From: Podarcis filfolensis
Taxonomy: Eukaryota
NCBI GenBank assembly: GCA_964270895.1
Contig: OZ185437.1
Reading direction: 5' to 3' (one strand)
DNA: 64,000 nucleotides
Under the pieces are notes generated by a model that saw only the letters and a program-made list of their open reading frames with translations, had not been told where the DNA came from and searched no databases. How positions within the stretch are numbered: position 1 is the first letter of the stretch; every line of letters begins with the position of its first letter. The position numbers were made by a program, and so were the translations under genes. Shown in pieces: positions 12,743-64,000 of the stretch.

Positions 12743-12914
12743 GGAAGGGTTGTAGCTCAGTGGCAGAGCATTTGCCTTGTATGCAAAAGGTCCTATGTTT
12801 TTCCCCCTGCATCTCCAGGGAGGGCTGGAAGAGATTCTCTGTCTGAAACCCTGGAGAGCTGCTGCTGATTATTGTAGGTGGAGTCTGACTCAGATAAGGC
12901 AGCTTCCTATTCCT
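12743..12914 (+). mobile_element. squamate tRNA-derived SINE (Squam-type)
   Basis: A-box-like tagctcagtggcagagc head, body catctccagg...ctgaaaccctggagagctgctg, tail gactcagataaggcagcttcctat; related copies elsewhere in the window. Confidence 0.85.
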
Positions 12915-20147: not shown

Positions 20148-20364
20148 ATGTTATATGGAAGCTGTTTGATTGTTGTTATTTGTGCTGGGCAACTGTGGGT
20201 GATTAGCTTGTGATTAATCACTTTTATGTGCTCAAGATTCTTGCTCTTGTTGTCTGGTGGAAAAAAATCTCTTACATGGAATTCTCCCATACTTGCATGT
20301 GAAGTTCAAAAATGATTTCAACTAGGTTTTACTGTATGAAATATATATAAATATATAGTAGATC

Positions 20365-20367
<3 letters not shown>

Positions 20368-20399
<32 letters not shown>

Positions 20400-20410
20400 T
20401 ATAGTAGATC

Positions 20411-20449
<39 letters not shown>
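20368..20449. repeat. two (TG)n tracts, each preceded by tatagtagatc
   Basis: Direct reading: 20368-20395 and 20413-20449. Confidence 0.95.
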
Positions 20450-22314: not shown

Positions 22315-22402
22315 GCAGAAGGAGAAGATAGCCTTAAAAAGATGCAGTTGATGGAACTTGCAATTCTCAATGGCACCTACAGAGACGCCAATATCAAATC
22401 AC
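22315..22402 (+). CDS. QKI: QKI exon 5 (88 nt; end of KH/QUA2 region)
   Basis: ttcAG|GCAGAA...TCAC|GTAAGT; translates [29 protein letters not shown](P), the vertebrate QKI QUA2 sequence; missed by the ORF track; exon number follows the human gene. Confidence 0.97.
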
Positions 22403-23952
22403 GTAAGTACAACAGAAATGTGGGGGTTTTATATGGGAGGATGCTTTTAAGTTGTGTTTGTTCGCACTAGATTGGAAGACAAAATATTGCCTGTGTTACA
22501 TATGTAGCCCACTGACCCCTTATAGATCTTGCCATTTCCATAATCTTGACTCCTACACAGAAAACATCTCATGAATGTGCTTCACATGCCCTATCTTGCT
22601 TTTCCAGAATGTGCACACTCTCAGTTTGTGTAGTAATATGATACTGCTGTACTTATAATGTCATGGCATCATACAAAGTGAGCAAAGCATGCTGCTGAGA
22701 GGATTGGGATTAGGCACATTTCTTTCACATCTTAACTCTCCTTAAGAGTATCTTTAAATATTGATCTAGCTGTGTAAGACCCACTTTTCTTAGAAGGGCT
22801 TCTGCATGACTGGGGTTAACTTAGATCTAGCCATGTGAGCAGAGGCGGATTGTATGGTTGCTGGCAAAAGAATTGGCACCTGCAAGGAAGGGTATATATG
22901 CCAGTGCTGTAGGAAAAACCCACTGAATAAGCTACCCTCTCTTAGTTCCAAGAAGGACCAGTTTAAAAATAAAATAAATGTTTTGAAGATATTTAATATA
23001 TAGTTAGTGCTTTCTGTGTAATTATTGGCATGTTTTCCCTTTTTTCAACTCTTCAGCTATGAGTTCAGTCATATATTTTTTGCAATGGTTCTTAGTTTCA
23101 TTCAGCATGTTTTCAGAAACTGCATATTCAAGGTTATCTTAAAACTAAATGTCTTGCACTAATTGGGTTAGATTTCAGTCATGTTTGAAACATAATTAAC
23201 GGGCAAATCATTGCACTTTGAGGGTAAGAGTAGTCAGCCTAATCACTAATTGATATGGGCAATAATTTTTCCTGTCACTGCCTTCTTTCACTTAATGAAC
23301 CACAGTCTCGCATAACAAACCCAACAGAGACTTACATAATGCAACTAAGTTAGCTCATTCTGTTAGCTTTAACACAGAGCTTGTCCAGAGAAAAATGGAT
23401 TTCTGGTGTGTTAAGGGGACCTAAAATTATTCTTAGGCTTTGATCAGTGTGTTGGAGGCTCCAGATGCATGCATTTAGGAAAACCGCTTTCATTGAAAAG
23501 AGGTGAAATGTTAACAAAAAATTATCTTCCTGCTGTTCTAGTGTCTCTTGATATCATCTGTATATGTTTAAACTGTGCTTAAATTGGTTAAAAGAACTTA
23601 ACACTGAAATCCTGTCTATACTTGGGAGTAATTTCTAAGTAAATATGTATTGGTTAAAACCTACAAGTCTAATTGATGCATATGGGACCTTGCAATCCAA
23701 TTAAAGCTCAGCTGATTTTCAGTGATTTTTGTGGAGTGTCTTACAGGTAGATTTCCCAGTAGCTGAATTTTTCTTACATTTTAGGCGTGTATCTTGAAGC
23801 TTGCTTGGAACATTAGCAGTCCCTGGATTATTTGCTTTCTTTAAGTGGATGTAGTAGTGGTGGTGATGGGAGGTTCTAGCTGCTGTAGTTCTAGATATAG
23901 TGGAAATGTGCAAGCAATATTATGTTGATGTTTTCAGTAAAGTCTGATTTAT

Positions 23953-27684: not shown

Positions 27685-27850
27685 CCGTATTTTTCCATGT
27701 ATAACACACCCCCATGTATAAGACTCTTTTTGGGGACAAAATTGAGAAAATGGGGGAAGATTGCCCCGTGTATAAGACGGGCCCAAATTTTTAGCATAAC
27801 TTTTTAATTTTAAAAAACAACAGCCTAGTCTTATACACAGAAAAATACGG
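27685..27850. mobile_element. Tc1/mariner MITE (CCGTATTTTTC TIR)
   Basis: TA-CCGTATTTTTC ... GAAAAATACGG-TA. Confidence 0.85.
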
Positions 27851-27970
27851 TAGTTCTCTTTAGTATAACTTTTTAATTAAAAAAAACAACAGCCTAGTCT
27901 TATACACAGAAAAATACGGTAGTTCTCTCAGTCTGGTCAATTATGCTGTCAGTCTGGTCAAATTATACTG
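27791..27970. repeat. 69-bp tandem duplication followed by a 21-bp tandem duplication
   Basis: 27791-27859 approximately equals 27860-27928; cagtctggtcaattatgctgt / cagtctggtcaattatactgg at 27929-27970. Confidence 0.9.
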
Positions 27971-30228: not shown

Positions 30229-30525
30229 CAGCCCTTGCCTTTTCTCTTGCAGCAACAGCCCAGGCTCCAAGGATTATTACGGGGCCTGCGCCTGTTCTCC
30301 CACCAGCTGCCCTGCGTACCCCTACGCCAGGTGGCCCTACCTTAATGCCTTTGATCAGACAAATACAGACCGCTGTCATGCCAAATGGAACTCCTCACCC
30401 AACTGCTGCAATAGTTCCCCCAGGACCTGAAGCTGGTTTAATTTACACACCGTATGAGTATCCCTACACACTGGCTCCTGCTACATCAATTCTTGAGTAT
30501 CCTATTGAACCCAGTGGTGTATTAG
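30229..30525 (+). CDS. QKI: QKI exon 6 (297 nt; Pro/Tyr-rich C-terminal region)
   Basis: tgtAG|CAGCCC...GTATTAG|GTAAGT; (P)[98 protein letters not shown](G); phase 1 matches exon 5. Confidence 0.98.
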
Positions 30526-30593
30526 GTAAGTTCTTCCTAGATAATTATTTGAATATTAATTTATCAGGTGGCGAGTTTCTTATACTAAGATAA
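30526..30593 (+). CDS. QKI: read-through of the exon 6 donor (QKI-7B-like tail [22 protein letters not shown])
   Basis: In-frame continuation into the intron to TAA; mammalian QKI-7B (recalled GKFF...) arises the same way; no expression evidence here. Confidence 0.4.
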
Positions 30594-31509: not shown

Positions 31510-31565
31510 AGGAGATTGAAATGTCTCACATTCCTGATACTTTGGTCTGTTCATTTGCTGGATGA
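31510..31565 (+). CDS. QKI: QKI-7-type alternative terminal exon, diverged (EEIEMSHIPDTLVCSFAG*)
   Basis: cctcctttttttacAG|AGGAGATTGAAATG; phase 1 fits exon 6; ExIEM..xPD aligns with mammalian EWIEMPVMPDISAH; lies between exon 6 and the QKI-6 exon as in mammals. Confidence 0.8.
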
Positions 31566-31889: not shown

Positions 31890-32994
31890 TTCATATCTAA
31901 ACAGTTACTATGTTGAAAGTAGTGCTCGTTTACAGAAGAATAGACCTTGTGTGTCTGTATGCACAAGCTCACATCTTCTTGGTCATAGGAAGAGAACATT
32001 AAGCACTCAAGTTTTTGCTTTTCATTGTTTGCTACTACTTTTGTAGAACCAATTCAGCTCTTCACAGTGCTTTGCCTTTTATCTTAGCCCTGATTTTGAA
32101 TTAATGACATCTACAATGTGGTGCTTTGGGGCCATGGGTACACTAACTTTTCCTATATTCTTTTCTCTTCCTTTGCAAGTCTTTTTTATTTCAGATGCAG
32201 ACCGTCTTTTCAGGAGCAATATTAGTAGTTTAGCCCCACATTCTGTCACCGGTAGCAAATCTCTTTACATGACTTCATCCAATCCTAACACCTCTGTGGT
32301 ATGGATTACTGGAAGTCATGCATAACAAATTGTAAATGTAGCAGTTCCATAGGCAATAATCTAGCCTAATCCATAATCCATTATTAGCTTAGTTTTGGGG
32401 AGCAGACTATTGGTAATCATAATAATTGCAGTCTATAGTAAAAGATAAAGCATTGTAAAGTATTATTGTATGGAAATAGGTGAATTACTTTTAGCTGACC
32501 TCAACCCCTCCCCTCCATAGACTATTTCAATTTAACTACTAGAATTGTGTGGAAGTACTAATTTTACCTATGTGGTGAATTCAGAGTAATCAACCAAACT
32601 CAAAGCTTTGTAGGTGCCATAACACCTCCAATTTTCTTGCTGGGGATGGGCACAGAATTAGAGCCATGTTTGTGATTGGAGAGATTATGTGAAGAACTGA
32701 CAGCAACATTGAGACAATTGGAAAAAGAAAGTTGCCCCTGGCCTGGGACAAATGTATACAGTGCTACTAGGTGAAAATGCAAAATGGCAGTGTTGAAAAA
32801 TGAAGTTAGCCTCATTGATTTGAGTGGCACATAATAGATCCACATGCGATTTGCAGTAAAATGGTGACATATTGAGATAATATAAAGTTCTGAAAAGATT
32901 GATTTAGGAAAAATATGTGATAGAGGAAAGGAAGATTGGCAATAGTATCAAATCTTAGTTGACTAATGTTTCATTCCCTTCCTTTTATCTTTAG

Positions 32995-33020
32995 GTATGG
33001 CTTTCCCAACGAAAGGCTAA
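32995..33020 (+). CDS. QKI: QKI-6 terminal exon coding part (GMAFPTKG*)
   Basis: ccttttatctttAG|GTATGGCTTTCCCAACGAAAGGCTAA; identical to the known QKI-6 C-terminal octapeptide. Confidence 0.97.
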
Positions 33021-33251
33021 GAATTCAAGAATGGTCTTAACTGAACCCTCGTCAGAGCTGACTTTAACAAATGCTTAGTTTTCAGCAGCCTTGAAAAAAC
33101 ATAGCCTAGCAGTCAGTGACTTACTTGCACTTTTTTGCACATAGAAATAAAAATGCTATTAATTTGGTATAGCCTGTACTATGACAAACTAGCTGTGATT
33201 TATGAGTGTATGGTAGTATACTGACTGCTATGTATTCTGTACTATTTGCTT

Positions 33252-33266
33252 TACTAATCACCTAAT
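33252..33266 (+). promoter_or_regulatory. bipartite Quaking response element (NACUAAY-N-UAAY) in the QKI-6 3' UTR
   Basis: TACTAAT (33252-58) followed 4 nt later by TAAT (33263-66). Confidence 0.6.
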
Positions 33267-33714
33267 TCATTGCAGTTCACAGTTATTGACTTAGTTTTAA
33301 ACCACAGTCTGTAGGCTTGAGGAATTGCTTTAAAACTTTTTAAAATGGTAAAAACTGGAAGTTGCTTTAAAATTAGCAAAGAATCTTCAGTATTAAAAAT
33401 GGCATTATTTAAGGTAGTCCTGCTGCAAGGAAGGCACTTCAGTGAATATGTGACTAGTAAAGCTCAAATGTGCTTGGGTCTAGTAGATTTCATGAAACTG
33501 TAATCTTGAGTTTGTAAATGAATGGATAATGCAGGTTAAGGCCCGGATGTTTAAAAAAAAATGCAATATTAATCTGCACAGGTATACTTCATATATTAAG
33601 ATTAAAATTTGAAACTACTGTGCCTTAACTTGTTGCTTTCTTAAAATGAATTTTTTTTTAGAAAGTGATCATTTTAAATCCATTTTGATAAGCCTGCTGT
33701 TAATGTTTTATCAA

Positions 33715-33862
33715 NNNNNNNNNNNNNNNNNNNNNNNNNNNNNNNNNNNNNNNNNNNNNNNNNNNNNNNNNNNNNNNNNNNNNNNNNNNNNNNNNNNNNN
33801 NNNNNNNNNNNNNNNNNNNNNNNNNNNNNNNNNNNNNNNNNNNNNNNNNNNNNNNNNNNNNN
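33715..33862 (+). other. QKI: 148-nt N-run; inferred to contain QKI-5 exon 7c ([25 protein letters not shown])
   Basis: About 0.7 kb downstream of the QKI-6 acceptor, where this exon lies in mammals; the peptide was not found elsewhere in the window; sequence unreadable. Confidence 0.65.
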
Positions 33863-36800
33863 TGCTTTGAGTGTACATGAAATTTGCAACACCACAGCTG
33901 GTTAACCAAATACTATTTTGACCATTATATTGATGTTTTACATTAAATTGAAGTGCTAGTAATATTTGTTCCAGAGGTTTAAAATTGTTAACTACTGTAC
34001 TCTTTTCATCTAAATGATTTTTTCTTTAAAAAAAAAAACACCTTCAGCGTATTCAATATAAAATGCTATAACCTGTTCCTTTTGTAAGCACTATGTATGA
34101 TTTAAATTCAAGCAGGACTGAAGTCTTAGTATTGCATTAATAGTTGACCCTCCCATGTGACTATTATTAATTGGAGATATCAGATTGGTGTTGCAAAATA
34201 AAATGAATAGATGGGCGCTTAATGAGATAGAAGTAAATGCTTTCTTATTATTACAGGAGAAAGCTGAAGATTTAGTTTCCTCTCTTCTGATAAATGGTTT
34301 GTGCCACTGTACTGTAACTTGAGCAGATATCTGAGAACAAAACCCGTCTCTAAATTTAGCAAAACAAAACAAAAAAACAACAACAGTAAAATTGATATAT
34401 CAGAAGTTGGTTAGGGTTTGTGCTGATAAAGAATATTTCACTTCTGTTAAAAAATATAAATTTTTAGTTATATCATTTGATGCTAAAATTTATTTCTTGA
34501 ACTTGTTACAATTTTGACATTCTGGTTAGCAAAGACAACTGCTTTTGGACTCTGTTTGGCTTAGCTAACGGATGGAAAATAAATCTTCATTTTCTCCTTT
34601 TACATGAAATGTAATTCATGTTCCTCGAACTCTTGGACCCGTGAATGGTTTAATCCTCCTGTGAAAAGTGAGCTCTCGGTTTATTGACATTGAGTGTGCT
34701 ACTGGCAGTAGTGTGACTGTGTATTCTCAGGAGCATTTATCCCACATGTAGTATCAGCTTGGTTTGTGGATTTGATAAGTAGCAGTACTGCCTGTTTCCG
34801 TAGAAATCCTCCTTCCCTACCTCACAGGGGTGTTGTGGGGCTTAATGTGTGTTGTACAGTTCAGAAATACAAACTAGAATGGAAGTGTTGAATTGCAGTG
34901 CTTGAGGTATGAGAGTTTTCTGTAGGTTTGATACATTTGATAGCATTCAGGTAATGGCTCTTTTATCTACTTGCAAGACTTAGAAGGTTGTATAACACCC
35001 CATGAGCCTTTTCATACATTTAACCTGTTCTTGGGCTCATACCAAAGCAACTCAGTGTTACTACAGACATTCCAAACCAGAGTAGTAGTTGAATAAACAG
35101 AATTAATATAGTTTCCCTCAATACATTACTTAGTTATGACAAGCTTCTTTTGAACAATCTTTCCCCCTACCCTACTTTCTCATTACATACAGATAGTGTG
35201 CCTTTCCAGTTCTATCTTTGTTAGATTGCCCAAATGTGAGTATAATATTTGAACAGGGTTTACATGCAGGGGAAGAAAAAGAATGCACATAGGCCCAGTT
35301 CACTTGGTTCACATATTTGAGGAATGGGGTAAATTACATGATTCTGCTTAATGCAATTATGTGGATTTTACATGCTTGTACACTATTAAAGTGTTATTAA
35401 CATATAGGGATGTGAAAGGATGCTGGAAGCAGGACAGCTTTGTCCGGTGAATAGGGTGGGAAGAAATAATTTCACACTCAGTTGCTGGTAAGGAAAAAAG
35501 GTAGCGGAAAGTATTGCTGAACTCAGCCACAGACTGTCCCTGTTTCTGTTTTTGCAGCTGGAAAGTTTGAGCATTTGGGTACTAATACAGGCAGCCACTT
35601 ACTTTTGCTTCTAACTAGATGTGGCTGTTGGAAAATATTTTGTAAGTTTTTTTGGTCAGATTTTGGCTTCAAGTAACTTGAGGATGTAGCATCAAGGTTT
35701 TTAGTTTTATTAACTATAGTCTTGGAATTGGAATTCCTTTTAGTAGCAAGGGCTCCCAAAGTGCCTTCTCAATTATAACTACTATTGTATATAATATAAG
35801 GAGGTGAAGCTGACCTCCGTAACGTTTTTCCTTCAGTGCTTATTTGCTAATGGTGCTATATGATTCAAAAATAAGTGTAATTAGTGAACACTGTAGGTAA
35901 TTTAAGATTTCATAAAACTAATATAGTATTTGTGTTCATTTTAAGTTGCAGTAGATTTGAGTGCTACACCTGTTTCTCTCAATAGGATTGTTGTGTGCAT
36001 ATATTGGTATTTTGTTTAGATTTTATTTAACTACTTCCATACAACCAACTTCTAAGTTAAAAGAAATTTCACTTTTTGAACATTTCCATTATGCTAAAAT
36101 TAGTGGGCACTTTCTATTTACACTTGCTGTAGATTTATAATACTTTGATTACCTGTCCAATATTGATGGTAGTTAAAATACAATGTCAGTAAACCGAATT
36201 GCTTTCTCTTCATAAGGAAAAGCTGCAAGAAGATGAGAGGCAGAATGTACATTCACTGGGTCTATGATTAAACTTTTTTCCAAATTATGTATGCTACTAT
36301 TATATTCTCTCATTAAGCAAGCTGTTATTCTTAATGCTAGCTTACATGTAAGCATTGCATTCAAAGCAAGAGCCCACAATTTGTCAGCATTCTTTTAAGA
36401 ATTAAGTTTAGAATGGAAGAATTCAGCAGTACTTAATTAATTTCCGCCAAGGTTAAGGCCCCGCTATATAAATAATACAAAACTGAATTTGATTCATGTA
36501 ACGAGAGTGACTGACTGATCTAATTGTAATAAACTGTAAATGGTGTGTGTTGCACAGTTGACAAACCTGTGTGTACTGTAGAAGGCCAGGGACTTGGCAG
36601 AGGATGTATCACAGGTGTACTGGTATCTTAAGATAGCTTGCATTGATTTTATAAACCACAAAAAATGGCAGTGCTAAGGCCATAACTGAATGTTTTCAAA
36701 GCCAATTGTCACATAATTTATGTCTAAAATTTGTAATACCATTTTAATCAAAATTGTAGTAAGTACCAAGAATGCTTTAAGATTCCGGATATCTAGTATA

Positions 36801-37382
36801 CATTTTAAGGTGGCAAGATGGTGCCACACTAAATATTTATTTTTTAATTTTGTTTTTGTTTTTATTTTTTGACAACATTTTTAGCTTAAACCCCACTTCT
36901 CAGCATTTTTTTTTTCAAAAAAAATCAATAAATCAGGGAACATGAGGTCTCATTTAAGTTACAGCAATAATGTTTAGTGTTCATGAACTGTAGCCTAAAT
37001 GATAGGCCATAGAAACAATGTAACATGTGAAGATGAATCCAACCCATGATGTCTGTCATTAAATAGTGTGCTATCTGTGAACATTGCACCTACTGAATTT
37101 CATTTTACAAAATGGCACAAATCTGACTTTGCACTGAATACCTTTCTCACTTCCATCTCCTCTGCTTTAGTCAATGGCAACAGTACAAATATTTTTTCAA
37201 ACCTCAATTTATTAGAGATGATAAAGCTGTTGAATGAGTCTTAAAATTTGTACTACTGTAAAGTGGACCAAGTTGTTGAAGGAGAATGTGAGAGAGTCAT
37301 TAAAGAAGGAACAGCTCAAGAACATTGGGAATGATAACTTTCCACTTGAGAACTTTTTTTATGTTTTACTGTAATTTTTGTG

Positions 37383-37514
37383 NNNNNNNNNNNNNNNNNN
37401 NNNNNNNNNNNNNNNNNNNNNNNNNNNNNNNNNNNNNNNNNNNNNNNNNNNNNNNNNNNNNNNNNNNNNNNNNNNNNNNNNNNNNNNNNNNNNNNNNNNN
37501 NNNNNNNNNNNNNN
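37383..37514. other. 132-nt N-run in the QKI 3' region
   Basis: Direct reading. Confidence 0.95.
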
Positions 37515-38322
37515 TAGTTTTTAAAATGCCTTATTAGTATCAATTAGATTTCCTCTATTTTTGATGTAACTAGAGCATTTTAAGTATAGAATTTAAAATG
37601 GCAGGACTTTTACAGTGTTTACATACAAGTGCATTTTCTTAGTGTCCTATCTGTGTAAAATAGCATTTTCAGCAGGAAAAGCTGGCTAGAACATTTGGCC
37701 TTTTCCTGGTCCCTATGATGATGCCTACACTTCTAGACTTCAATTTAGTATTGCTTTGTATCATGAAGCCAAGAAATTCAATGTTGTTTGTAAATAGAAT
37801 CATTGAAAAGCAATAAAATATATTGAACAAAAAAACTTGTTTGGCCCATAGTTTATGTGAAACCAAATTGTTCATGACAAATCAAATTCCTTAGATTCAT
37901 TTCTTTTAACAATCAGTTTTTAATAATCACATTCATCATTACTACTTGCTTTGATGCTTGCACATGGGAGAATACTAATGCTTAATAGCAGTCAGATACT
38001 GATATGGTGCACTGACTGTTCTAAATTCTTTTACCAAGTTCCAGAAACTGTTCATTGTTTTTTTTCCCCTTTCATCGACTGCTACTAACCATTAGATATA
38101 TTTTATTTCTATTTTTCCTTGTTAACCAGTTTTGTGGGAGTGGGCTTCTCCTTCATATGTTCAAATCATGATAGAAGGCTGTCATGATTTTTATTGCATT
38201 CTGTAGATGGTGTCAAGCAGTATGTCAGAATTAAACATGCTTGTTTTTATTAGTTGTGATTAGTTTTCATGTTGTCATTAAGCCGTCACTAGCTGAAACT
38301 AATCTCTTCTCTATCTTTCTTT

Positions 38323-38601
38323 NNNNNNNNNNNNNNNNNNNNNNNNNNNNNNNNNNNNNNNNNNNNNNNNNNNNNNNNNNNNNNNNNNNNNNNNNNNNNN
38401 NNNNNNNNNNNNNNNNNNNNNNNNNNNNNNNNNNNNNNNNNNNNNNNNNNNNNNNNNNNNNNNNNNNNNNNNNNNNNNNNNNNNNNNNNNNNNNNNNNNN
38501 NNNNNNNNNNNNNNNNNNNNNNNNNNNNNNNNNNNNNNNNNNNNNNNNNNNNNNNNNNNNNNNNNNNNNNNNNNNNNNNNNNNNNNNNNNNNNNNNNNNN
38601 N
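38323..38601 (+). other. QKI: 279-nt N-run; inferred to contain the QKI-5 last-exon acceptor, the AATGN* codons and the proximal 3' UTR
   Basis: Left flank is ACTAAT plus a pyrimidine tract (aactaatctcttctctatctttcttt) cut before any AG; right flank gtagtaaagcaataagg.ccaattcatccc...gcactgatcatctttta matches my recollection of the mammalian QKI-5 3' UTR. Confidence 0.75.
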
Positions 38602-39171
38602 GTAGTAAAGCAATAAGGTCCAATTCATCCCTCCGCACTGATCATCTTTTAGTGTCCCACCCTAAATGAATGGTAAGAACGGCCTCACTTGAGAGATGGA
38701 GGCAGATGTCCCTTAACTCCCTGATGACAGAGGCAGTTACTGTGAGACTTCTAGGAATCTTTTTCTTCTCATAAAGAAGTCAAAGTTCTCTTTGAATGTA
38801 CTGTGTGATGATGCATCATGCATGAACCTTTGGTCAGGGATGTCATTGGTGAAGGGATTCCTAAAAGTATTCAAAATTTGACATGCAGTGTAGTCACTAC
38901 CAATGCCCTCAAAGGGCAGAAGATGCAGCCTTTTTTATATTACCTGCCAAATTGGGTGTTTTTAAGAAGAAAAAAGTGCCATGAAAGATAGGTTACTGAA
39001 TTTTTGAACTACATCAATGCATAAACTAAACAGCAACACTATTGAAGCTAATCCTGAGATACTTTCTTTTACTATACATCAACTTCCTTAAAAGATTACA
39101 TGAGTACAAGGTACATGCATTATGTGTCACATTACTGGGCAAACTGTTCAAATATTTTTTTAAACCTCCCT

Positions 39172-39502
39172 NNNNNNNNNNNNNNNNNNNNNNNNNNNNN
39201 NNNNNNNNNNNNNNNNNNNNNNNNNNNNNNNNNNNNNNNNNNNNNNNNNNNNNNNNNNNNNNNNNNNNNNNNNNNNNNNNNNNNNNNNNNNNNNNNNNNN
39301 NNNNNNNNNNNNNNNNNNNNNNNNNNNNNNNNNNNNNNNNNNNNNNNNNNNNNNNNNNNNNNNNNNNNNNNNNNNNNNNNNNNNNNNNNNNNNNNNNNNN
39401 NNNNNNNNNNNNNNNNNNNNNNNNNNNNNNNNNNNNNNNNNNNNNNNNNNNNNNNNNNNNNNNNNNNNNNNNNNNNNNNNNNNNNNNNNNNNNNNNNNNN
39501 NN
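39172..39502. other. 331-nt N-run inside the QKI-5 3' UTR
   Basis: Direct reading. Confidence 0.95.
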
Positions 39503-40649
39503 GTGCCTTATTTTCTTCATGGTCATTTAGTCAGACGTCTCGTATAATCCGCTCCTCCCTCAGACAGCAAGTTAATGCATGCCACTCTGTCGCCCAGTAT
39601 GTGAAAAGAAGCTGTGAGGAAAGACAAATGAGTTGACCATTTAAATTACCTGGTTTTTGCCATAGCATAATGCAACTTTGTCAGATCTGAAACTGTGAAA
39701 TGGAATTGTTCCACCAACAGCCAACCGCAATATTTTTGTAACATGTTCCCTCTTCAATTGTAGACAATATATTTTTATAGTACTTGCTCAGCCTTAAACC
39801 AAAGGGTTCTAAGATGCAGTCTCATTCTAAATCAAAGTATTAGATTACACTATTTATACAGTAGCAAGTGTTATACCCCCCCCCGCCCCCGGAATAGGTT
39901 GCATTGTCCCTATTTGAAATAGATAAGGGAAAACACAGCAGAACGTGAACTTGCCTACAGGATGACTTTGTCCATGACTAAACTGAGCATTCAGACAGTC
40001 TGTCTTTGAGCATGTTTTAGGTTTTTGTGTGCTTCATCTACAATGCCAAATAGTGTGTACTCCTCATCAAACTCCTACTTGATGAATGTTAACTGTCGGT
40101 TGCGCTTTACTGAAAAGGAAAAGAAGTATCAGTTAACTATCTGGAAGTTCAGCTATGCTTCAGTTTGAGTCAGTAAACATTTGCATAGCTGGGCTAGTGG
40201 TGATAAAACACTTTACGCACAAAGGTGAAGTAAAAATATATATGAGCAAGTAGTGATACGTTAATTGCTTTGAGCAGATTTGGCAAAGATCAGGTGATAA
40301 CCCCCCTCCGTTGTGTCAACTTATTATCCTAAAAATCTTCACAGCTTCCAAATCAAAGGTCAATAGTAAGTTAGGTAAGAGGGCTTACTTTTTAAGCACC
40401 TGCATGGTGACTTGGTCTAACCATTGTGTCTCACCTGGAAACAAGTATCAATTTATTTACTATGCAATAAACATACATCCTTTTGTATTCAGCTAGCTTT
40501 TATTTTATCTTGCCACTGGCTTTGTCTTCCTGTTACACATAGGTTTTTTGGTTTGACTTTCAGTATATGCTGTGCCATTTTGATTTTTGTTTGGTTGAAT
40601 AAACTTGCAACACTCAAAAATTTTGGAGAGAGAATTGCTAAAACATAAC

Positions 40650-40912
40650 CAGTATTTGATCCAGTTTCATCTCAACTATGATAAACCTGGACATTTTTAG
40701 ATGCTGATCAAAGGTCTCTTCTTGGGAGAAGTGTGACTTATAAAAGTAATGTTTGTTCTGAAAAAGTTTGAAGACTTAGTTGACAACATTTTGGATCAAC
40801 TTAAAGCATGACATTTGAAATCTCTGAATGCCTTGGTTCTCAGTATTATCATTCTTTATTGAATTTTTCTTTATTAAAATATGTAGTCTAAGACTTTTTT
40901 CTGACAGTATTA
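40650..40912 (+). promoter_or_regulatory. cluster of miR-200b/c/429 seed sites
   Basis: CAGTATT at 40650; CAGTATTA 8mers at 40841 and 40905. Confidence 0.7.
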
Positions 40913-40986
40913 TGTAATTTTTTTTAGAGTGGGTATACATACATCGCTTGTATGTTACCATACAGACATGTATTTGTCTATTCCTT

Positions 40987-41142
40987 NNNNNNNNNNNNNN
41001 NNNNNNNNNNNNNNNNNNNNNNNNNNNNNNNNNNNNNNNNNNNNNNNNNNNNNNNNNNNNNNNNNNNNNNNNNNNNNNNNNNNNNNNNNNNNNNNNNNNN
41101 NNNNNNNNNNNNNNNNNNNNNNNNNNNNNNNNNNNNNNNNNN
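40987..41142. other. 156-nt N-run inside the QKI-5 3' UTR
   Basis: Direct reading. Confidence 0.95.
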
Positions 41143-44100
41143 CTGATTGAGAAAAGGATACAAAAATGCAAAACCCACAATTTTGATAACTGAAAATTGC
41201 CAATTGTTTTGCAGTACTTTATTATTATATTGGGAGTGTTGTCTTTGGGCTTTTAGTTAGCTACTGGATTGAATACATTAGACATATCTGGGTTTTAGTT
41301 GGGTTTTTACATAGCTTGCATTTTAATTCTTTGGTTCTTTGCTGTTTCTATTAACCCATAGCATTATTTTAATAAATGTTATAATACCAACCTACTAACT
41401 CTGGACTATGTCAGTTTATTAACCATTACATGTTTAATTAAAATAAACAAGGAAAGACGGAAGAATGTAAAGTCTTGAGTTATTGGACTAACCCTGAAGA
41501 ACGTGACCACCGATAACACAACGTGACTTGTTTTATGTTGTTTGTTTGGCTGACATTCTGCACACTACTATTAAATTGGCTTTGGTCATTCTGGCCTCTT
41601 ACCTTGGGGGTAGGTGCCAATAGAGTTGGGAACAAGTAGCATTATTGGAGGCATTCTTGTAGAGTCTTGCCACTTGCCTTTCAGCATCTGCATTACTAAT
41701 TCCACACTTTCCTTCTCTGAAATAATCACTGTCAGCTCACAGCAAAAGGGCAAAGATACCAATCTATTGGTAAATTATGTTATGTGCCCAGAGGAACCAG
41801 TTTGATTCTTTGTTGAGCCATTTTGAAGCTACACAAATTCAGTGTGATTTGAAGCACTGATTAAAAGGACAATTCAGCAGACATCTCAATATGTAACTCT
41901 CCTGTGTTGTTCATGCTTCTGAATGTATTTGAAGCAAGAAACGTTTCACCCCTTACTCTAGCAGAATCTGCCTCTCCCTTGTACATGAATCTAAATTACT
42001 TTCACTGTGACCCTGAAGGGGTTTAAGTTGCAATCCTCAAACTACATAATTCTCAGGTAATTGTACTGACTTCAAGCAGGTTGCTTCACAGTAAACAGCT
42101 TGAACACTGTAGCTTAACTACTTTTAGGATTGCGGGTTTTTAAATCTACTGTAGTGTTTGAACACCACTTAGCTCAGGGCAGTACAAAGCTGTACAAAGT
42201 CGAATAGGTCATTTTGTAACAACTGCAAAAAGTAAATAAACTCTTTAGTAGTAGCCATTTTCAAAAAGGAGGTCTAAAGTTGACTGTTACCAAGGGATAA
42301 CTTTAGCAATCAGAGTTCAGAGAAGCAAGCTGTAGTAAGTTACTTTCAATCAACTTCATTCTACTAGGAAACAATTGTTAAGAACTTGGGGTTATATCCC
42401 CAAATTCATCCTATTTACACAAGGACTACAGCTTGTGCAACCGAATTTCTCTGTCTTGTCCCATGTGCACCTCTTCTGGGAGGTTTCCCTGTCTCTCCAA
42501 AGCATGCTGTGGGGGTGCATGAAGAGAGGAAAGGGGGAGTTCCATTGCACAAACAGTGTCCTTGTGTGAAAATGGGGTGACTGTTCAATACAACCCATGC
42601 TTTCTGTGGCCTATTCATAGCTGCTATGTTAATTACATTTGTTTAAAATTTACTCATTTGTAAACAAAAATGATTTTGTATAGACAATGACACCTGAGTA
42701 AATAAATCAGTTTTAAATATACCCATTAAAATATATATAACTGAAGCATTATACTTCAGTTCCACCACATAATAAAAACAAAATCCCATCTATTAGATAG
42801 AGGCTATGTTAGGACAGATTGATACATTTTAAACATAATCAAGGATTCTTTATGAATAATATAATAAAGTAGAAAATACTGAAATCCAGAGTTTTAACTA
42901 GATAATACTCAATATTTGTGATAATATGAAAGTTTGCTCTTAAGTATAAAACAATAAAAGGGTGTTTTGTAATAAAGGTTGATAACCCACTTCAGTATTA
43001 CACCAATATACCTGTCATCAATATGCTTCAGTGGTCAACAAATGTTAGCCTTGCCCCATGAGTTGTATTCAACACTACATGAAAGGAACAGACTTTGCTT
43101 GTGCGGTTGGATGTCACCTTCATTTTCTACCCCATGCAACCTTCTACACACCCTAAAAATTGCTCCAGAGGGTTTGGGGAAGGCGAGAAGTCCTGCTGTG
43201 CAAGTGGATGTCTTCCCTTGCAGCACTGGTTGCATACCCACTTGTTTGAAGCCACAACCAACGTTGATTAATATTTGTATAATATAGAACAGTGAGACAC
43301 ATTTTTAAAATAAGAATAGTAATAATAACCATGGCTTGTTTTATGGTGAGAAACCAAACCTTCCTGTGAGCTGGAAGAAGGGATTTAATTTGTATGTAAA
43401 GGCAAAAGGCATGTCATTCCAATGACAGATGCTCATGCCTGTTGAGCCCTGCTGAGTGTGGATGGGCTTTTGAAAAAGCTGCTATTCAATGGAGTTGGGA
43501 AGCACCCATGCACAAGCACAGCACCTCATAAATCAGGATCCTTGCCATATAGTTCCTTGAGATGGCACCTTATGTATTTAATTTGAAATTGGAGTTAGAC
43601 ATTATTTCTAAATACTTAAGTCACATTTTAAACACTGCTGGTTACTTAGTAATAAAAATCTACTACCATGGGGGATGGGGGTACCCATTGTTAAGTCTCA
43701 TCGGAAAAGGCTCACTGAAATAAGGGTGAGTTACTTAAGTCTGCTTGTTGCTGTTACACTCTTTAGTATAGCTATCATTAAATTTATTATTTGCCCTTTA
43801 CCAGCAGGTCCCTGTGATTTTTCCTCTGAAGTGGGGAGAGTTTGTGGCTATTTTTCCTGGAATAAACAAGCTCATCTAAATACAAGACAATATGTAACTG
43901 GAAGAAATAAACTGGTCAAGACACCAAATTCATAGCCTGCTTACAAGTCCTATTAACCATGATGAAGCTGGCATCTGAGTAAACATGTTTAGAATTGTGC
44001 TATGATATCCTGTAGAAGTTAAAAATAGTCCTTAGGCCATAATTTTGTCCATTCAAGTAGAATTTATCTTTGTGCACCTAACCTATTTGGATTAAATAGT

Positions 44101-51347: not shown

Positions 51348-53729
51348 GAATAGATCAGAGGCGCAAAATGTGGCAGTGACTAATGGCGGTGGCTCCCTCC
51401 TCCCTGACCATTTATGGGGCAGCTGATTGGAGGGGGTGTGCCTAAACCATTTTTCTCTCCTCTCTTCTAGCTCCAGCAGCCATTTTCTGTTATCCTACAC
51501 TGCCCATGGCTGCCATTTTGTGATTGGCACCCTTAGCACCTGCTCAAAATTCCAAATGAGCCTACTAGCCTTCCAGTGTCAGCAACCCCTGAATTAAGTT
51601 TAAGTCTTCAGGAGTCCTTCCATGGACAGAAAGCCTCTTCTATGCATGAGAGCCCTTGCCACAAATTAGCATAAGAGTCTTGTGTTGTACAATTACTTCT
51701 GCTAATTATTGTGCAGCAGTTCTTGGAACAGTGATACCGCCGGCACGTCTTCCACTAGTATATCTCTGGATACATCCCACAAAGAGCTCTACCACTTAGC
51801 TATGTCCTTGCCCGTATTTTCTGTTTCCTGGGAACAAGTACAAAAGATCTGAGGAAAGCCAGAAATTTAGTGCTTTGGCCCATATACAATGAAAGCCCTA
51901 TTACTTTTCAAATGTGTTCCTGGTCATCCAAGCTTCCTGGAATGGAGCCATCTGCCTTCTTCCTATTCATAAGGAATAGCTATTTTCTTTCTTGGCACCA
52001 TTTTGTGTAACCAACATAAAAGGCAGAGTATGGGGCTAAGATAGGGCCTCTTCACTACACATTCCTTGTCCTACAACTTTTGTTTTCTACCTCAGGCCTG
52101 CAAAACTTGTATGCCATGAAGCCTGACGCAGCCCACCAGATAGAAATCATAGCCTGAGACATCTTTTCTCACACAGGCAGGCCAGCGAAGGTGGGAAGTT
52201 TGTCAAGCCTGTTAAGTTTCCATGCCTGCCTGGTAGATCACACATTTTGCAGGCTTATCGTACACCCTTTCCTTTGCCCTGCATTTTTTGCAAATCCCAT
52301 TCCCCAGTGCTTCCCTTCCTTTAGGTTGCAAAGAGGATGATTATTAACACAACTTCTGAATGAGAAAAGATCCAAAAGGCACAAACGAGCAGCGACTAAT
52401 CCTCCTAAGTGGCTTTCTTAACTGTGATCTGGGTGTCACTTCCAATAAACCAGATGTCTTCTGCTTCTAGAAATGGTGACCTGCGCACCTCAGATTCTTG
52501 CCAAGCCACTGAGGGAACTTGCCGCACTGCTGAAAGTCTTTTTCGAGCCCCTCATTACAAAGACCTTTGTGGAAAAAGCACTGCTTTCTGCTGTGTAATG
52601 CCGAACATACTAATAAGATAAGTGTTTCATGTATAAAAGTCAACAAACATTCAAAAGCAAAATAGACACACACACACCCCTTTCGCTGGCCTCTTGTCTT
52701 TTTATTTGGTCTCTGCTGGGTCTTTTCATCAAAGAACACATTTGAATGAAAAACTCCCTCAGCTTTGGATTCTGTTCATCAAAGTGCATTTTGCTACAGG
52801 AAATTAGAATTTCTCAGGAAATTATAACTCTTATATAGCCTTAATATGAAGAGGACTGAGGACCCCCCTGAGGGGACAGTGGTCAGCTGTGCTCCTGATC
52901 CTTCTATTGACCATGTGTACTGAGGGGCTTTTCCTTTCCACTTCTGCATGTGGGGTTCCACATGTTATTTGTAGGATCAAGATGTGTTACTGAAGGGAGA
53001 GGGAAATTCCAAAATAAGGCTTCATTACTACACATTAGTAAGGACATGATAATTTGCACCCCCCCTTTAAGGACATACCTTGTGATGCTGCTGCAGTTGT
53101 TCAGAAACGTACTCTTGCCAAGGTCTGGACAGTTGACAAGGGATGTGCTTGGCAGGGCCATGGCATGGGTGACAGGATGATAAAACTGGCTCTTTGGAAA
53201 TGAGGTTGGCATTTAACTTCTTAGTGGTGCTTTAAACTATCTTTATAAACCAAATTCTCGCTAAATTCTAAAACACTGATACATTACGTCTCCATATTGT
53301 TTGAGGTAATTTATGTGGAACCTGCAAACTGAGGGGCTGATTTCGAGATTTAAGGACAGCAAAGGGTGGCTATTGCCGTCTGGCCCTGTCAGATGTTTAT
53401 CTATGCAAACACACTTTTAGAAATGAACTGAGAGTTAGGGCAGCTGTTTTTAAAACCGAGTATACTCATGACTAAGTAAATTTATAGTTGGTAGGAGTTA
53501 CTGAGGGCAGGATTCTTGCTCTCAAGCCATTGTTACAAGCATTCTGAATTACAGGGCTCATCTAGACTTCCTTTCGTGCCATGCTTTTGAGGCACAGGTC
53601 TGCGCTTTAAAGCTCTGTGTCCAAACAGTTGTTTTCGTGTCCTGGCACTTTCCCTGGGAAAACCCCCATTTTACTGCTGAATCAGAGCAAATGGAGAAAA
53701 CGCAGGCCAGTGCCTAGAAATGCAGCACA

Positions 53730-63200: not shown

Positions 63201-64000
63201 GGGAAAAGCAGCGACTGACTTCTATTAGTTACTCTGGGACTTCTGAGAAGAAACTTCAATGGAAGCAAGAACATAGCTGTTCTTTGGTAACGTATGACTA
63301 GCCTTGACCAAGCTAAAACTAGTCTTGATCTCTTATTTTAAATTATAAATCTTTTCTGTTTTAAACTCAGCTTCCTATTTCTTAACTGCTAACGTAATCT
63401 TCGAAACATTTTAAGAACAATTAATTGAGGTTGGTGGTTTTTTTTTTAAAAAAAGAAAAAAGAAAAGCTAGGAATCATCTCTCCACGTTAAGTTTATTTT
63501 CCTATTGTAATCTTATTATACCTTTCACTTGCTTGATGCGTTTAAGATTAACTTTCATTTATAAGAGGTTTATTTAGCATATTAATCCATCCCTTTCAAT
63601 TTGTAACCATTGTTCTTGCAAGCAAGCCATCCCATGTGATTTTGTAATGTTCATGCTTTGAAGACTGAGAAAACAACGTTATTCTTTTCAACTGGTCTGG
63701 TTTATGACTGATAACACACTTAGACCTTTGATCACTGGAAAGTAGGTACAGGCCTGAGGGCCAAACCGCACACAACACAGAGATCTGTGTCATTTCAACA
63801 ACACTCTTTAAAAACAAAGAGCAGCTAATGGGGGCTGTATGTCTGCGAATGGAGGAAAGGCACAACTTTTTGCCAACAATCGCCTTTCCTCCACTCCTTT
63901 TTATTTATTTATTTGAGTTTCTGATACAATTCCATATCAAAGAAATGAACGGAAACAATGCAAACGACACACAAAACTCCCCTCTGAAATAGAAATTAAA

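What the first reader, a model, noticed from the sequence alone, without database searches (positions are those of the whole stretch)
33715..41142. Five short N-runs sit on the most conserved parts of QKI and erase both QKI-5 coding exons
Seen: N-runs of 148, 132, 279, 331 and 156 nt occur only between 33.7 and 41.1 kb, in unique non-repetitive sequence, and nowhere else in 64 kb. Gap 3 starts inside a polypyrimidine tract just before the expected AG. Established: QKI-5, the nuclear isoform carrying the NLS, needs exon 7c and exon 8, and the QKI 3' region is very highly conserved in vertebrates. Inference: these are not true assembly gaps but masked segments, for example hits to human/mouse removed as contamination. 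The masking would mark the most constrained elements and make this species look QKI-5-less in annotation.
Basis: partly seen in the sequence, partly recalled or inferred. Interest (0 to 1): 0.72.

Follow-up and report, generated by a model that had tools for sequence, protein, structure and literature searches.

The report
Masked stretches in lizard QKI tail
The five short N-runs lie in the 3' end of a lizard's QKI (quaking) gene and are most likely deliberate blank-outs of stretches almost identical to human DNA. Two of them probably hide the exons for the nuclear QKI-5 form, so this is a data-handling effect over a known gene layout, not new biology.

Summary
The window has exactly five N-runs (148, 132, 279, 331 and 156 nt) at the stated coordinates and none elsewhere. 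All lie in unique, non-repetitive DNA.

The gene is QKI on the + strand, with these parts:
- exon 5 at 22315-22403
- exon 6 at 30229-30525
- a QKI-7B read-through tail
- exon 7a at 31510
- exon 7b (GMAFPTKG*) at 32995

No piece of the QKI-5 tail is encoded in any unmasked DNA. N-run 3 begins right after a 19/20 pyrimidine tract, with a branch-point-like ACTAAT 21 nt upstream. Published human UTR lengths place the QKI-5 exons 3' of the QKI-6/7 poly(A) site. That fits exon 7c under run 3 and the start of exon 8 under run 4.

Best reading (about 0.7): these are purposeful masks over human-like, deeply conserved sequence, not assembly gaps.

I could not prove this. The claim that the public annotation would look QKI-5-less is untested and unlikely if the mask belongs to the scan's own copy.

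The scan has noted the same kind of N-run on other pieces of this genome (IDE exons, a 7SK fragment, a TUBB retrocopy). Interest is low.

The parts
22315..22403 (+). QKI exon 5 ([29 protein letters not shown], ends in phase 1)
   Evidence: The 29-aa translation matches PDB 4jvh_A 'Protein quaking' residues 178-206, E 3.7e-13. It is flanked by ttcag| and |gtaagt.
30229..30525 (+). QKI exon 6, the last common exon; ends ...SGVL G|gtaagt in phase 1
   Evidence: It is not masked although its protein is almost invariant.
30525..30593 (+). QKI-7B-type read-through tail ([22 protein letters not shown] stop) when the exon 6 donor is not used
   Evidence: The distance from this stop to the QKI-7 stop is 972 nt, against 965 in human as derived from the UTR lengths in PMC9786888.
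31510..31565 (+). Exon 7a coding part (QKI-7-type tail, diverged: EEIEMSHIPDTLVCSFAG stop)
   Evidence: acceptor ttttttacag|. Also noted by scan note s1-279447.
32995..33020 (+). Exon 7b coding part (QKI-6 tail, G|GT ATG ... = GMAFPTKG stop)
   Evidence: Acceptor ctttag|, with ACTAAT 33 nt upstream.
33021..37835 (+). Shared QKI-6/7/7B 3'UTR. The end is uncertain: poly(A) signals at 36927, 37058, 37299 and 37812.
   Evidence: The human QKI-6 UTR of 4173 nt (PMC9786888) would end near 37193. No read evidence.
33715..33862 (.). N-run 1 (148 nt), inside the QKI-6/7 3'UTR, 695 nt after the QKI-6 stop
37383..37514 (.). N-run 2 (132 nt), at the distal end of the QKI-6/7 3'UTR, among its candidate poly(A) signals
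   Evidence: The tool states the filter also trips by chance and is no evidence of anything.
38298..38322 (+). 3' splice-site approach: ACTAAT (branch-point and QKI-motif-like; A at 38302), then a 19/20 pyrimidine, AG-free tract running into N-run 3
38323..38601 (.). N-run 3 (279 nt): inferred to hide the acceptor AG, exon 7c (about 74 nt if the peptide split in the finding is right) and about 200 nt of the next intron
   Evidence: Inference and from PMC9786888, PMC5548867 and PMC4699748. Letters not read.
38602..39171 (+). Unmasked 570 nt, inferred to be the middle of the intron between exon 7c and exon 8
   Evidence: GC is higher (0.45-0.47 at its first 100 nt and at the first 100 nt after run 4). 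No QKI-tail motif, no ACTAAY, no inverted repeats.
39172..39502 (.). N-run 4 (331 nt): inferred to hide the exon 8 acceptor, the last five codons, the stop, and the first ~300 nt of the QKI-5 3'UTR
   Evidence: Inference. The left flank is 75% pyrimidine. A stop near 39200 plus the poly(A) signal at 42235 gives a UTR of about 3.05 kb, against 3086 nt in human (PMC9786888).
39503..40986 (+). Unmasked part of the inferred QKI-5 3'UTR
40987..41142 (.). N-run 5 (156 nt), inside the inferred QKI-5 3'UTR
41143..42260 (+). Distal part of the inferred QKI-5 3'UTR. It has AATAAA at 41371, 41442 and 42235, and a bipartite QKI response element at 41394-41425. The end is uncertain.

Best explanation
The window holds the 3' half of a lizard QKI (quaking) gene. 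The five N-runs are deliberate masks that replace short stretches nearly identical to human DNA. They are not places the assembler failed. QKI's alternative 3' exons and long 3'UTRs are among the most conserved non-coding sequences in vertebrates, so a human-likeness mask falls here five times and nowhere else in 64 kb. It even spares coding exons 5 and 6, whose synonymous sites are free to drift. Runs 1 and 2 lie in the shared QKI-6/7/7B 3'UTR. Run 3 hides the acceptor, exon 7c (the nuclear-localisation tail) and the start of the following intron. Run 4 hides the exon 8 acceptor, the last five codons, the stop and the start of the QKI-5 3'UTR. Run 5 lies further along that UTR. Shown: the coordinates, gene identity, exon order, absence of the QKI-5 tail from unmasked DNA, and the splice-site anatomy at run 3. 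Inferred: what lies under the Ns, that the lengths are preserved, and who applied the mask.
For: Runs and their uniqueness. Gene identity: (PDB quaking, E 3.7e-13). Exon order 6, 7B read-through, 7a, 7b. This matches the mouse and human order 7a, 7b, 7c, 8 (PMC5548867, PMC9786888). No 4-5-residue piece of the QKI-5 tail lies between exon 6 and the end of the inferred QKI-5 3'UTR on the + strand; the only two hits in the window (PYQR at 63932, ATGN-stop at 52793) are isolated chance matches far downstream. Yet the 6-7c-8 form is conserved from zebrafish, gar and coelacanth to chicken and human (PMC4699748). [quoted passage not shown] Runs 3 and 4 are the first hidden stretches beyond the poly(A) signals at 36927-37812. 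Run 3 is preceded by ACTAAT plus a 19/20 pyrimidine, AG-free tract, stronger than the tracts of exons 5, 6, 7a and 7b. Stop-to-stop spacing of 972 against 965 nt in human shows how rigid this locus is.
Against: Nothing under the Ns was read, so exon 7c and exon 8 are placed by elimination and anatomy only. Length preservation is untested. The region is AT-rich (GC 0.35 against 0.395 elsewhere), which can cause real short-read gaps. With four candidate poly(A) signals per UTR, the length matches to human are weak. The supporting scan notes are unchecked AI notes.
Confidence: 0.7

Rival explanations
1. The runs are true scaffold gaps with estimated sizes. The assembler broke five times in an AT-rich stretch and the gap lengths come from paired-read or map distances.
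For: The lengths are unequal and not round, as estimated gaps are. The region has lower GC than the rest of the window. The scan's program itself labels them assembly gaps with estimated length.
Against: The flanks are unique, of ordinary complexity, free of tandem repeats and without contig-end overlap. An 82-nt (GT)n, a (TAT)14.7 and 13-nt homopolymers elsewhere are assembled through, and 33.7-kb and 22.9-kb stretches have no gap. Other equally AT-rich parts (10-12 kb, GC 0.33) have none. The placement coincides with the missing QKI-5 exons and a splice-site approach.
Confidence: 0.12
2. The masks are in the public assembly itself. A contamination or foreign-sequence screen hard-masked human- or mouse-like hits, so the species' annotation really lacks QKI-5.
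For: It has the same anatomy as the best explanation. Hard-masking after screening does occur in submitted assemblies (my own knowledge, not tested).
Against: Screens act on whole contigs or on adaptor and vector hits, not on 130-330-nt conserved elements inside a chromosome (my own knowledge).
Confidence: 0.1
3. The QKI-5 exons are not under runs 3 and 4. They lie under runs 1 and 2, or beyond the window, or were lost in this lineage.
For: No letter under any run was seen. One mouse RT-PCR description (PMC5548867: exon 6 to 7c primers also amplify a 'qkI-6 3'UTR' product) hints that 7c may lie within an extended QKI-6 UTR in mouse.
Against: The human QKI-5 UTR is stated to be completely distinct from the others (PMC9786888). 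Runs 1 and 2 have no splice-site approach, with 60-65% pyrimidine flanks. QKI-5 is conserved across vertebrates and is required for expression of the other isoforms in mouse cells, and the mouse mutant that appears to lack it is recessive lethal (PMC4699748, PMC5695090), so loss is very unlikely. The remaining 22.9 kb downstream carries only the two isolated chance matches (52793, 63932).
Confidence: 0.05

Closest known systems
Mammalian QKI/Qk 3' alternative-last-exon architecture (exons 6, 7a, 7b, 7c, 8; Kondo 1999 as cited in PMC9786888 and PMC5548867)
   Same: The order and phase of exon 6, the read-through 7B tail, the QKI-7 exon and the QKI-6 exon are the same. The QKI-6 tail GMAFPTKG is identical. 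Stop-to-stop spacing is 972 against 965 nt in human. Long UTRs carry several poly(A) signals and ACTAAY motifs.
   Different: The QKI-7 tail is diverged and four residues longer. The QKI-7 to QKI-6 stop distance is 1455 nt against 1261 in human. Exons 7c and 8 cannot be seen.
Ultraconserved and highly conserved elements in splicing-regulator genes (QKI is listed as UCE-rich in PMC13764104; QKI UTR conservation in PMC9786888)
   Same: The hidden stretches lie in the gene region these papers describe as exceptionally conserved. Their sizes (132-331 nt) are in the range of such elements.
   Different: Identity to human was not and may not be measured here, so membership is unproven.
Ordinary assembly gaps
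   Same: Both are written as N, and the scan's program labels these as gaps.
   Different: These runs have no conventional length, no repeat or low-complexity flank and no flank overlap. Five fall in 7.4 kb of unique DNA, while real hard sequence elsewhere is assembled.

Membership tests
QKI (quaking, STAR family) gene, 3' alternative-exon region | Coding exon matching the solved Quaking STAR domain | tested here: met
   Exon 5 peptide against PDB 4jvh_A 'Protein quaking' residues 178-206, E 3.7e-13, full query length
QKI (quaking, STAR family) gene, 3' alternative-exon region | Exon 6 ending in phase 1, followed in order by the read-through tail, the QKI-7 exon and the QKI-6 exon encoding GMAFPTKG-stop | tested here: met
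   Order as in PMC5548867 and PMC9786888.
QKI (quaking, STAR family) gene, 3' alternative-exon region | Exon 7c plus exon 8 encoding the QKI-5 nuclear-localisation tail | not testable with these tools
No part of the tail between exon 6 and the end of the inferred QKI-5 3'UTR; two isolated chance matches at 52793 and 63932.
QKI (quaking, STAR family) gene, 3' alternative-exon region | QKI-5 3'UTR distinct from, and downstream of, the QKI-6/7 UTR, about 3.1 kb long | tested here: inconclusive
   The poly(A) signal at 42235 gives 2.75-3.08 kb if the stop lies in run 4, but signals at 41371, 41442 and 42701 are alternatives. No reads.
Ordinary assembly gap | Conventional or fixed length | tested here: not met
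   Lengths are 148, 132, 279, 331 and 156. Estimated-size gaps are not excluded by this.
Ordinary assembly gap | Sits at repeats, low-complexity or duplicated contig ends | tested here: not met
Ordinary assembly gap | True length differs from the N-run length | not testable with these tools
   Only the literature on QKI UTR conservation (PMC9786888, PMC13764104) bears on it.
   Only unchecked scan notes: s1-302347, s1-325503, s1-323697, s1-329779, s1-329752

The most novel reading that the evidence does not exclude
The N-runs are present in the public lizard assembly itself. A screening step has blanked vertebrate ultraconserved elements genome-wide, so that QKI-5 and other deeply conserved exons (IDE 15a/b, 7SK) are missing from this species' annotation and from comparative datasets built on it.
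Probability: 0.08. Interest if true: 0.35.

Novelty: not a real feature. Interest (0 to 1): 0.1.

Why it matters
It matters mainly as a caution for the scan. In this genome, short N-runs in unique DNA should be read as blanked, very conserved sequence and not as missing genes. An apparent loss of QKI-5, the essential nuclear isoform, would be an artefact. As a by-product, the five runs roughly mark where the lizard QKI 3' region is most human-like: two places in the QKI-6/7 UTR, the QKI-5 exons, and one place in the QKI-5 UTR. The biology underneath is already described in mouse and human.

Tried and rejected
There is therefore no depth, junction or length evidence.
Rfam was run on 1-37960 and 38010-64000 only.
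3. Motif search for the QKI-5 tail in all + frames found nothing between exon 6 and the end of the inferred QKI-5 3'UTR; the two isolated hits at 52793 and 63932 are chance matches.
4. Pfam and NCBIfam on the exon 5 and exon 6 peptides gave no family. Identity rests on the PDB match and the recognisable tails.
5. Rfam gave nothing in the 3' region. Inverted-repeat search of the unmasked pieces gave nothing of note.
6. ACTAAY enrichment: 13 seen against 10.1 expected over 30-43 kb, so no overall excess. Three within 350 nt before run 3 gives P 0.0036 uncorrected and about 0.1 after allowing for scanning. I do not lean on it.
7. The long ORFs listed across the runs exist only because N translates as X.
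8. Not done on purpose: the big protein searches, because the protein is not in doubt and exon-sized queries cannot reach full-length QKI; a joined exon 5+6(+7) model, because exons were searched singly by reference; and any look-up of the hidden letters in this genome, in relatives or in human.
Full report
**Observation.** The window contains exactly five N-runs: 33715-33862 (148), 37383-37514 (132), 38323-38601 (279), 39172-39502 (331) and 40987-41142 (156). There is no other N in the 64,000 bases. No tandem repeat touches any run. All 20-mers in the 200-nt flanks are unique in the window. Left and right flanks share nothing but one A-run 12-mer at run 1. Flank complexity is ordinary. Elsewhere the assembly passes through an 82-nt (GT)n at 20368-20449, a (TAT)14.7 and 13-nt homopolymers, and it has gap-free stretches of 33.7 and 22.9 kb. 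Five points falling within 7.4 of 64 kb has P = 8e-4 under uniform placement.

**What the DNA is.** Six-frame motif search puts QKI on the + strand.
- Exon 5 is 22315-22403. Its 29-residue translation matches the solved structure of 'Protein quaking' (4jvh_A, residues 178-206, E 3.7e-13).
- Exon 6 is 30229-30525 and ends in phase 1 at a gtaagt donor.
- If that donor is not used, the frame reads on for 22 codons to a stop at 30591-30593. This is the QKI-7B type of tail.
- An acceptor at 31510 opens a diverged, 18-residue QKI-7-type tail.
- An acceptor at 32995 gives GMAFPTKG-stop, the QKI-6 tail.

This is the published order: exon 6, then the QKI-7 exon, the QKI-6 exon, and then 7c and 8 for QKI-5 (PMC5548867, PMC9786888). 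The spacing is rigid. The distance from the 7B stop to the QKI-7 stop is 972 nt, against 965 nt in human, derived from the UTR lengths in PMC9786888. The QKI-7 to QKI-6 stop distance is 1455 against 1261. Pfam and NCBIfam have no model for these exon pieces. I searched exons singly by reference and left out any joined model.

**Where the QKI-5 exons should be.** No 4-5-residue piece of the tail quoted in the finding occurs between exon 6 and the end of the inferred QKI-5 3'UTR in any + frame. The only two hits in the window, at 52793 and 63932, are isolated chance matches far downstream. Yet the 6-7c-8 transcript form and the tail itself are conserved from zebrafish, gar and coelacanth to chicken and human (PMC4699748). 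In mouse cells QKI-5 is required for expression of the other isoforms, and the mouse mutant that appears to lack QKI-5 is recessive lethal (PMC5695090). [quoted passage not shown] So 7c and 8 must lie beyond the QKI-6/7 poly(A) site.

In the lizard, a human-length QKI-6 UTR would end near 37193. Candidate signals lie at 36927, 37058, 37299 and 37812. The first hidden stretches beyond them are runs 3 and 4.

Run 3 is approached by ACTAAT (38298-38303, branch-point-like, A at 38302), followed by 20 bases of which 19 are pyrimidines, with no AG. This tract is stronger than those of exons 5, 6, 7a and 7b. Only 0.8% of 20-nt windows reach 85% pyrimidine. An acceptor AG is therefore expected within the first 20 or so hidden bases. 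Run 3 (279 nt) has room for a 74-nt exon plus about 200 nt of intron. The 570 unmasked bases between runs 3 and 4 have no coding or QKI motif and a higher GC, as an intron interior would.

If the exon 8 acceptor lies just inside run 4, the stop falls near 39200. The AATAAA at 42235 then gives a UTR of about 3.05 kb, close to the human 3086. With four candidate signals this match is only suggestive. Runs 1 and 2 then lie in the shared QKI-6/7/7B UTR and run 5 in the QKI-5 UTR.

**Continuity and frame.** Nothing coding abuts any edge. The longest open stretch reaching an edge is 47 codons, and the long 'ORFs' listed across the runs exist only because N is read as X. There is thus no reading frame to carry across any run. 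Whether the lengths are true could not be tested.

**What the runs are.** Several points argue against ordinary gaps:
- unique flanks
- unequal, unconventional lengths
- remnants of only 570 and 808 nt between runs
- placement on the region that the literature singles out as highly conserved between vertebrates (PMC9786888) and rich in ultraconserved elements (PMC13764104)
- the sparing of coding exons 5 and 6, which can drift at synonymous sites

Unchecked notes of this scan report, on other pieces of the same genome, N-runs over IDE exons 15a/b, one biting into a 7SK snRNA fragment, one cutting a TUBB retrocopy, and two windows where readers called the runs length-preserving masks. One note calls the genome a wall lizard. 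I take these as leads only, but they fit.

**What I could not do.**
The tool says this filter also trips by chance and is no evidence of anything.
Rfam was run on either side of them and found only a tRNA-like hit at 12746-12817.
- No contig was taken for human, and none was saved.
- The large protein searches were not used, because the protein is not in doubt.

**Rivals.**
- True estimated-size gaps in AT-rich DNA (0.12). This is favoured only by the lower GC (0.35 against 0.395) and the program's label.
I did not test it, and it is unnecessary given the scan's own filters.
- QKI-5 exons elsewhere or lost (0.05). Runs 1 and 2 lack any splice-site approach, and loss of an essential, universally conserved isoform is very unlikely.

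**Verdict.** It is a property of the data, not of the lizard, and the underlying gene layout is already known. Interest is low.

Noticed in passing
window 32139-32325 (+): Inside the QKI-7 3'UTR, between exons 7a and 7b, there is a near-consensus branch point (cACTAAC at 32142), a long pyrimidine tract and a tttcag acceptor (AG at 32193-32194). Joined to exon 6 in phase 1, it would add a 43-residue tail (D + ADRLFRSNISS...WITGSHA stop). It could be an extra alternative last exon or chance.
   Followed up: no
window 31510-31565 (+): The QKI-7-type tail is diverged and longer (EEIEMSHIPDTLVCSFAG) than the mammalian one, while the QKI-6 tail GMAFPTKG is unchanged. The scan also noted this as s1-279447.
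   Followed up: partly
window 41364-41446 (+): A bipartite QKI response element (ACTAAC, 19 nt, TAAC; 41394-41425) sits between two AATAAA signals (41371, 41442). It is framed by an AT-rich 22-nt inverted repeat. [quoted passage not shown]
   Followed up: no
window 37974, 38084, 38298 (+): Three ACTAAY motifs lie within 350 nt upstream of N-run 3, the last at branch-point distance. The excess is not significant after correction. The exon 7b acceptor also has ACTAAT 33 nt upstream (32962).
   Followed up: partly
window 12746-12817 (+): An Rfam tRNA hit (35.6 bits) in QKI intron 4 was not called by ARAGORN. It is probably a tRNA-derived SINE relic.
   Followed up: partly
window 20354-20449 and 27790-27928: An 82-nt (GT)n microsatellite and a 69-nt unit repeated twice, in introns 4 and 5, are both assembled without gaps.
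   Followed up: no
window 30525-30593 (+): The read-through of the exon 6 donor gives a 22-codon QKI-7B-type tail. Its stop lies 972 nt before the QKI-7 stop, against 965 nt in human (PMC9786888).
   Followed up: partly
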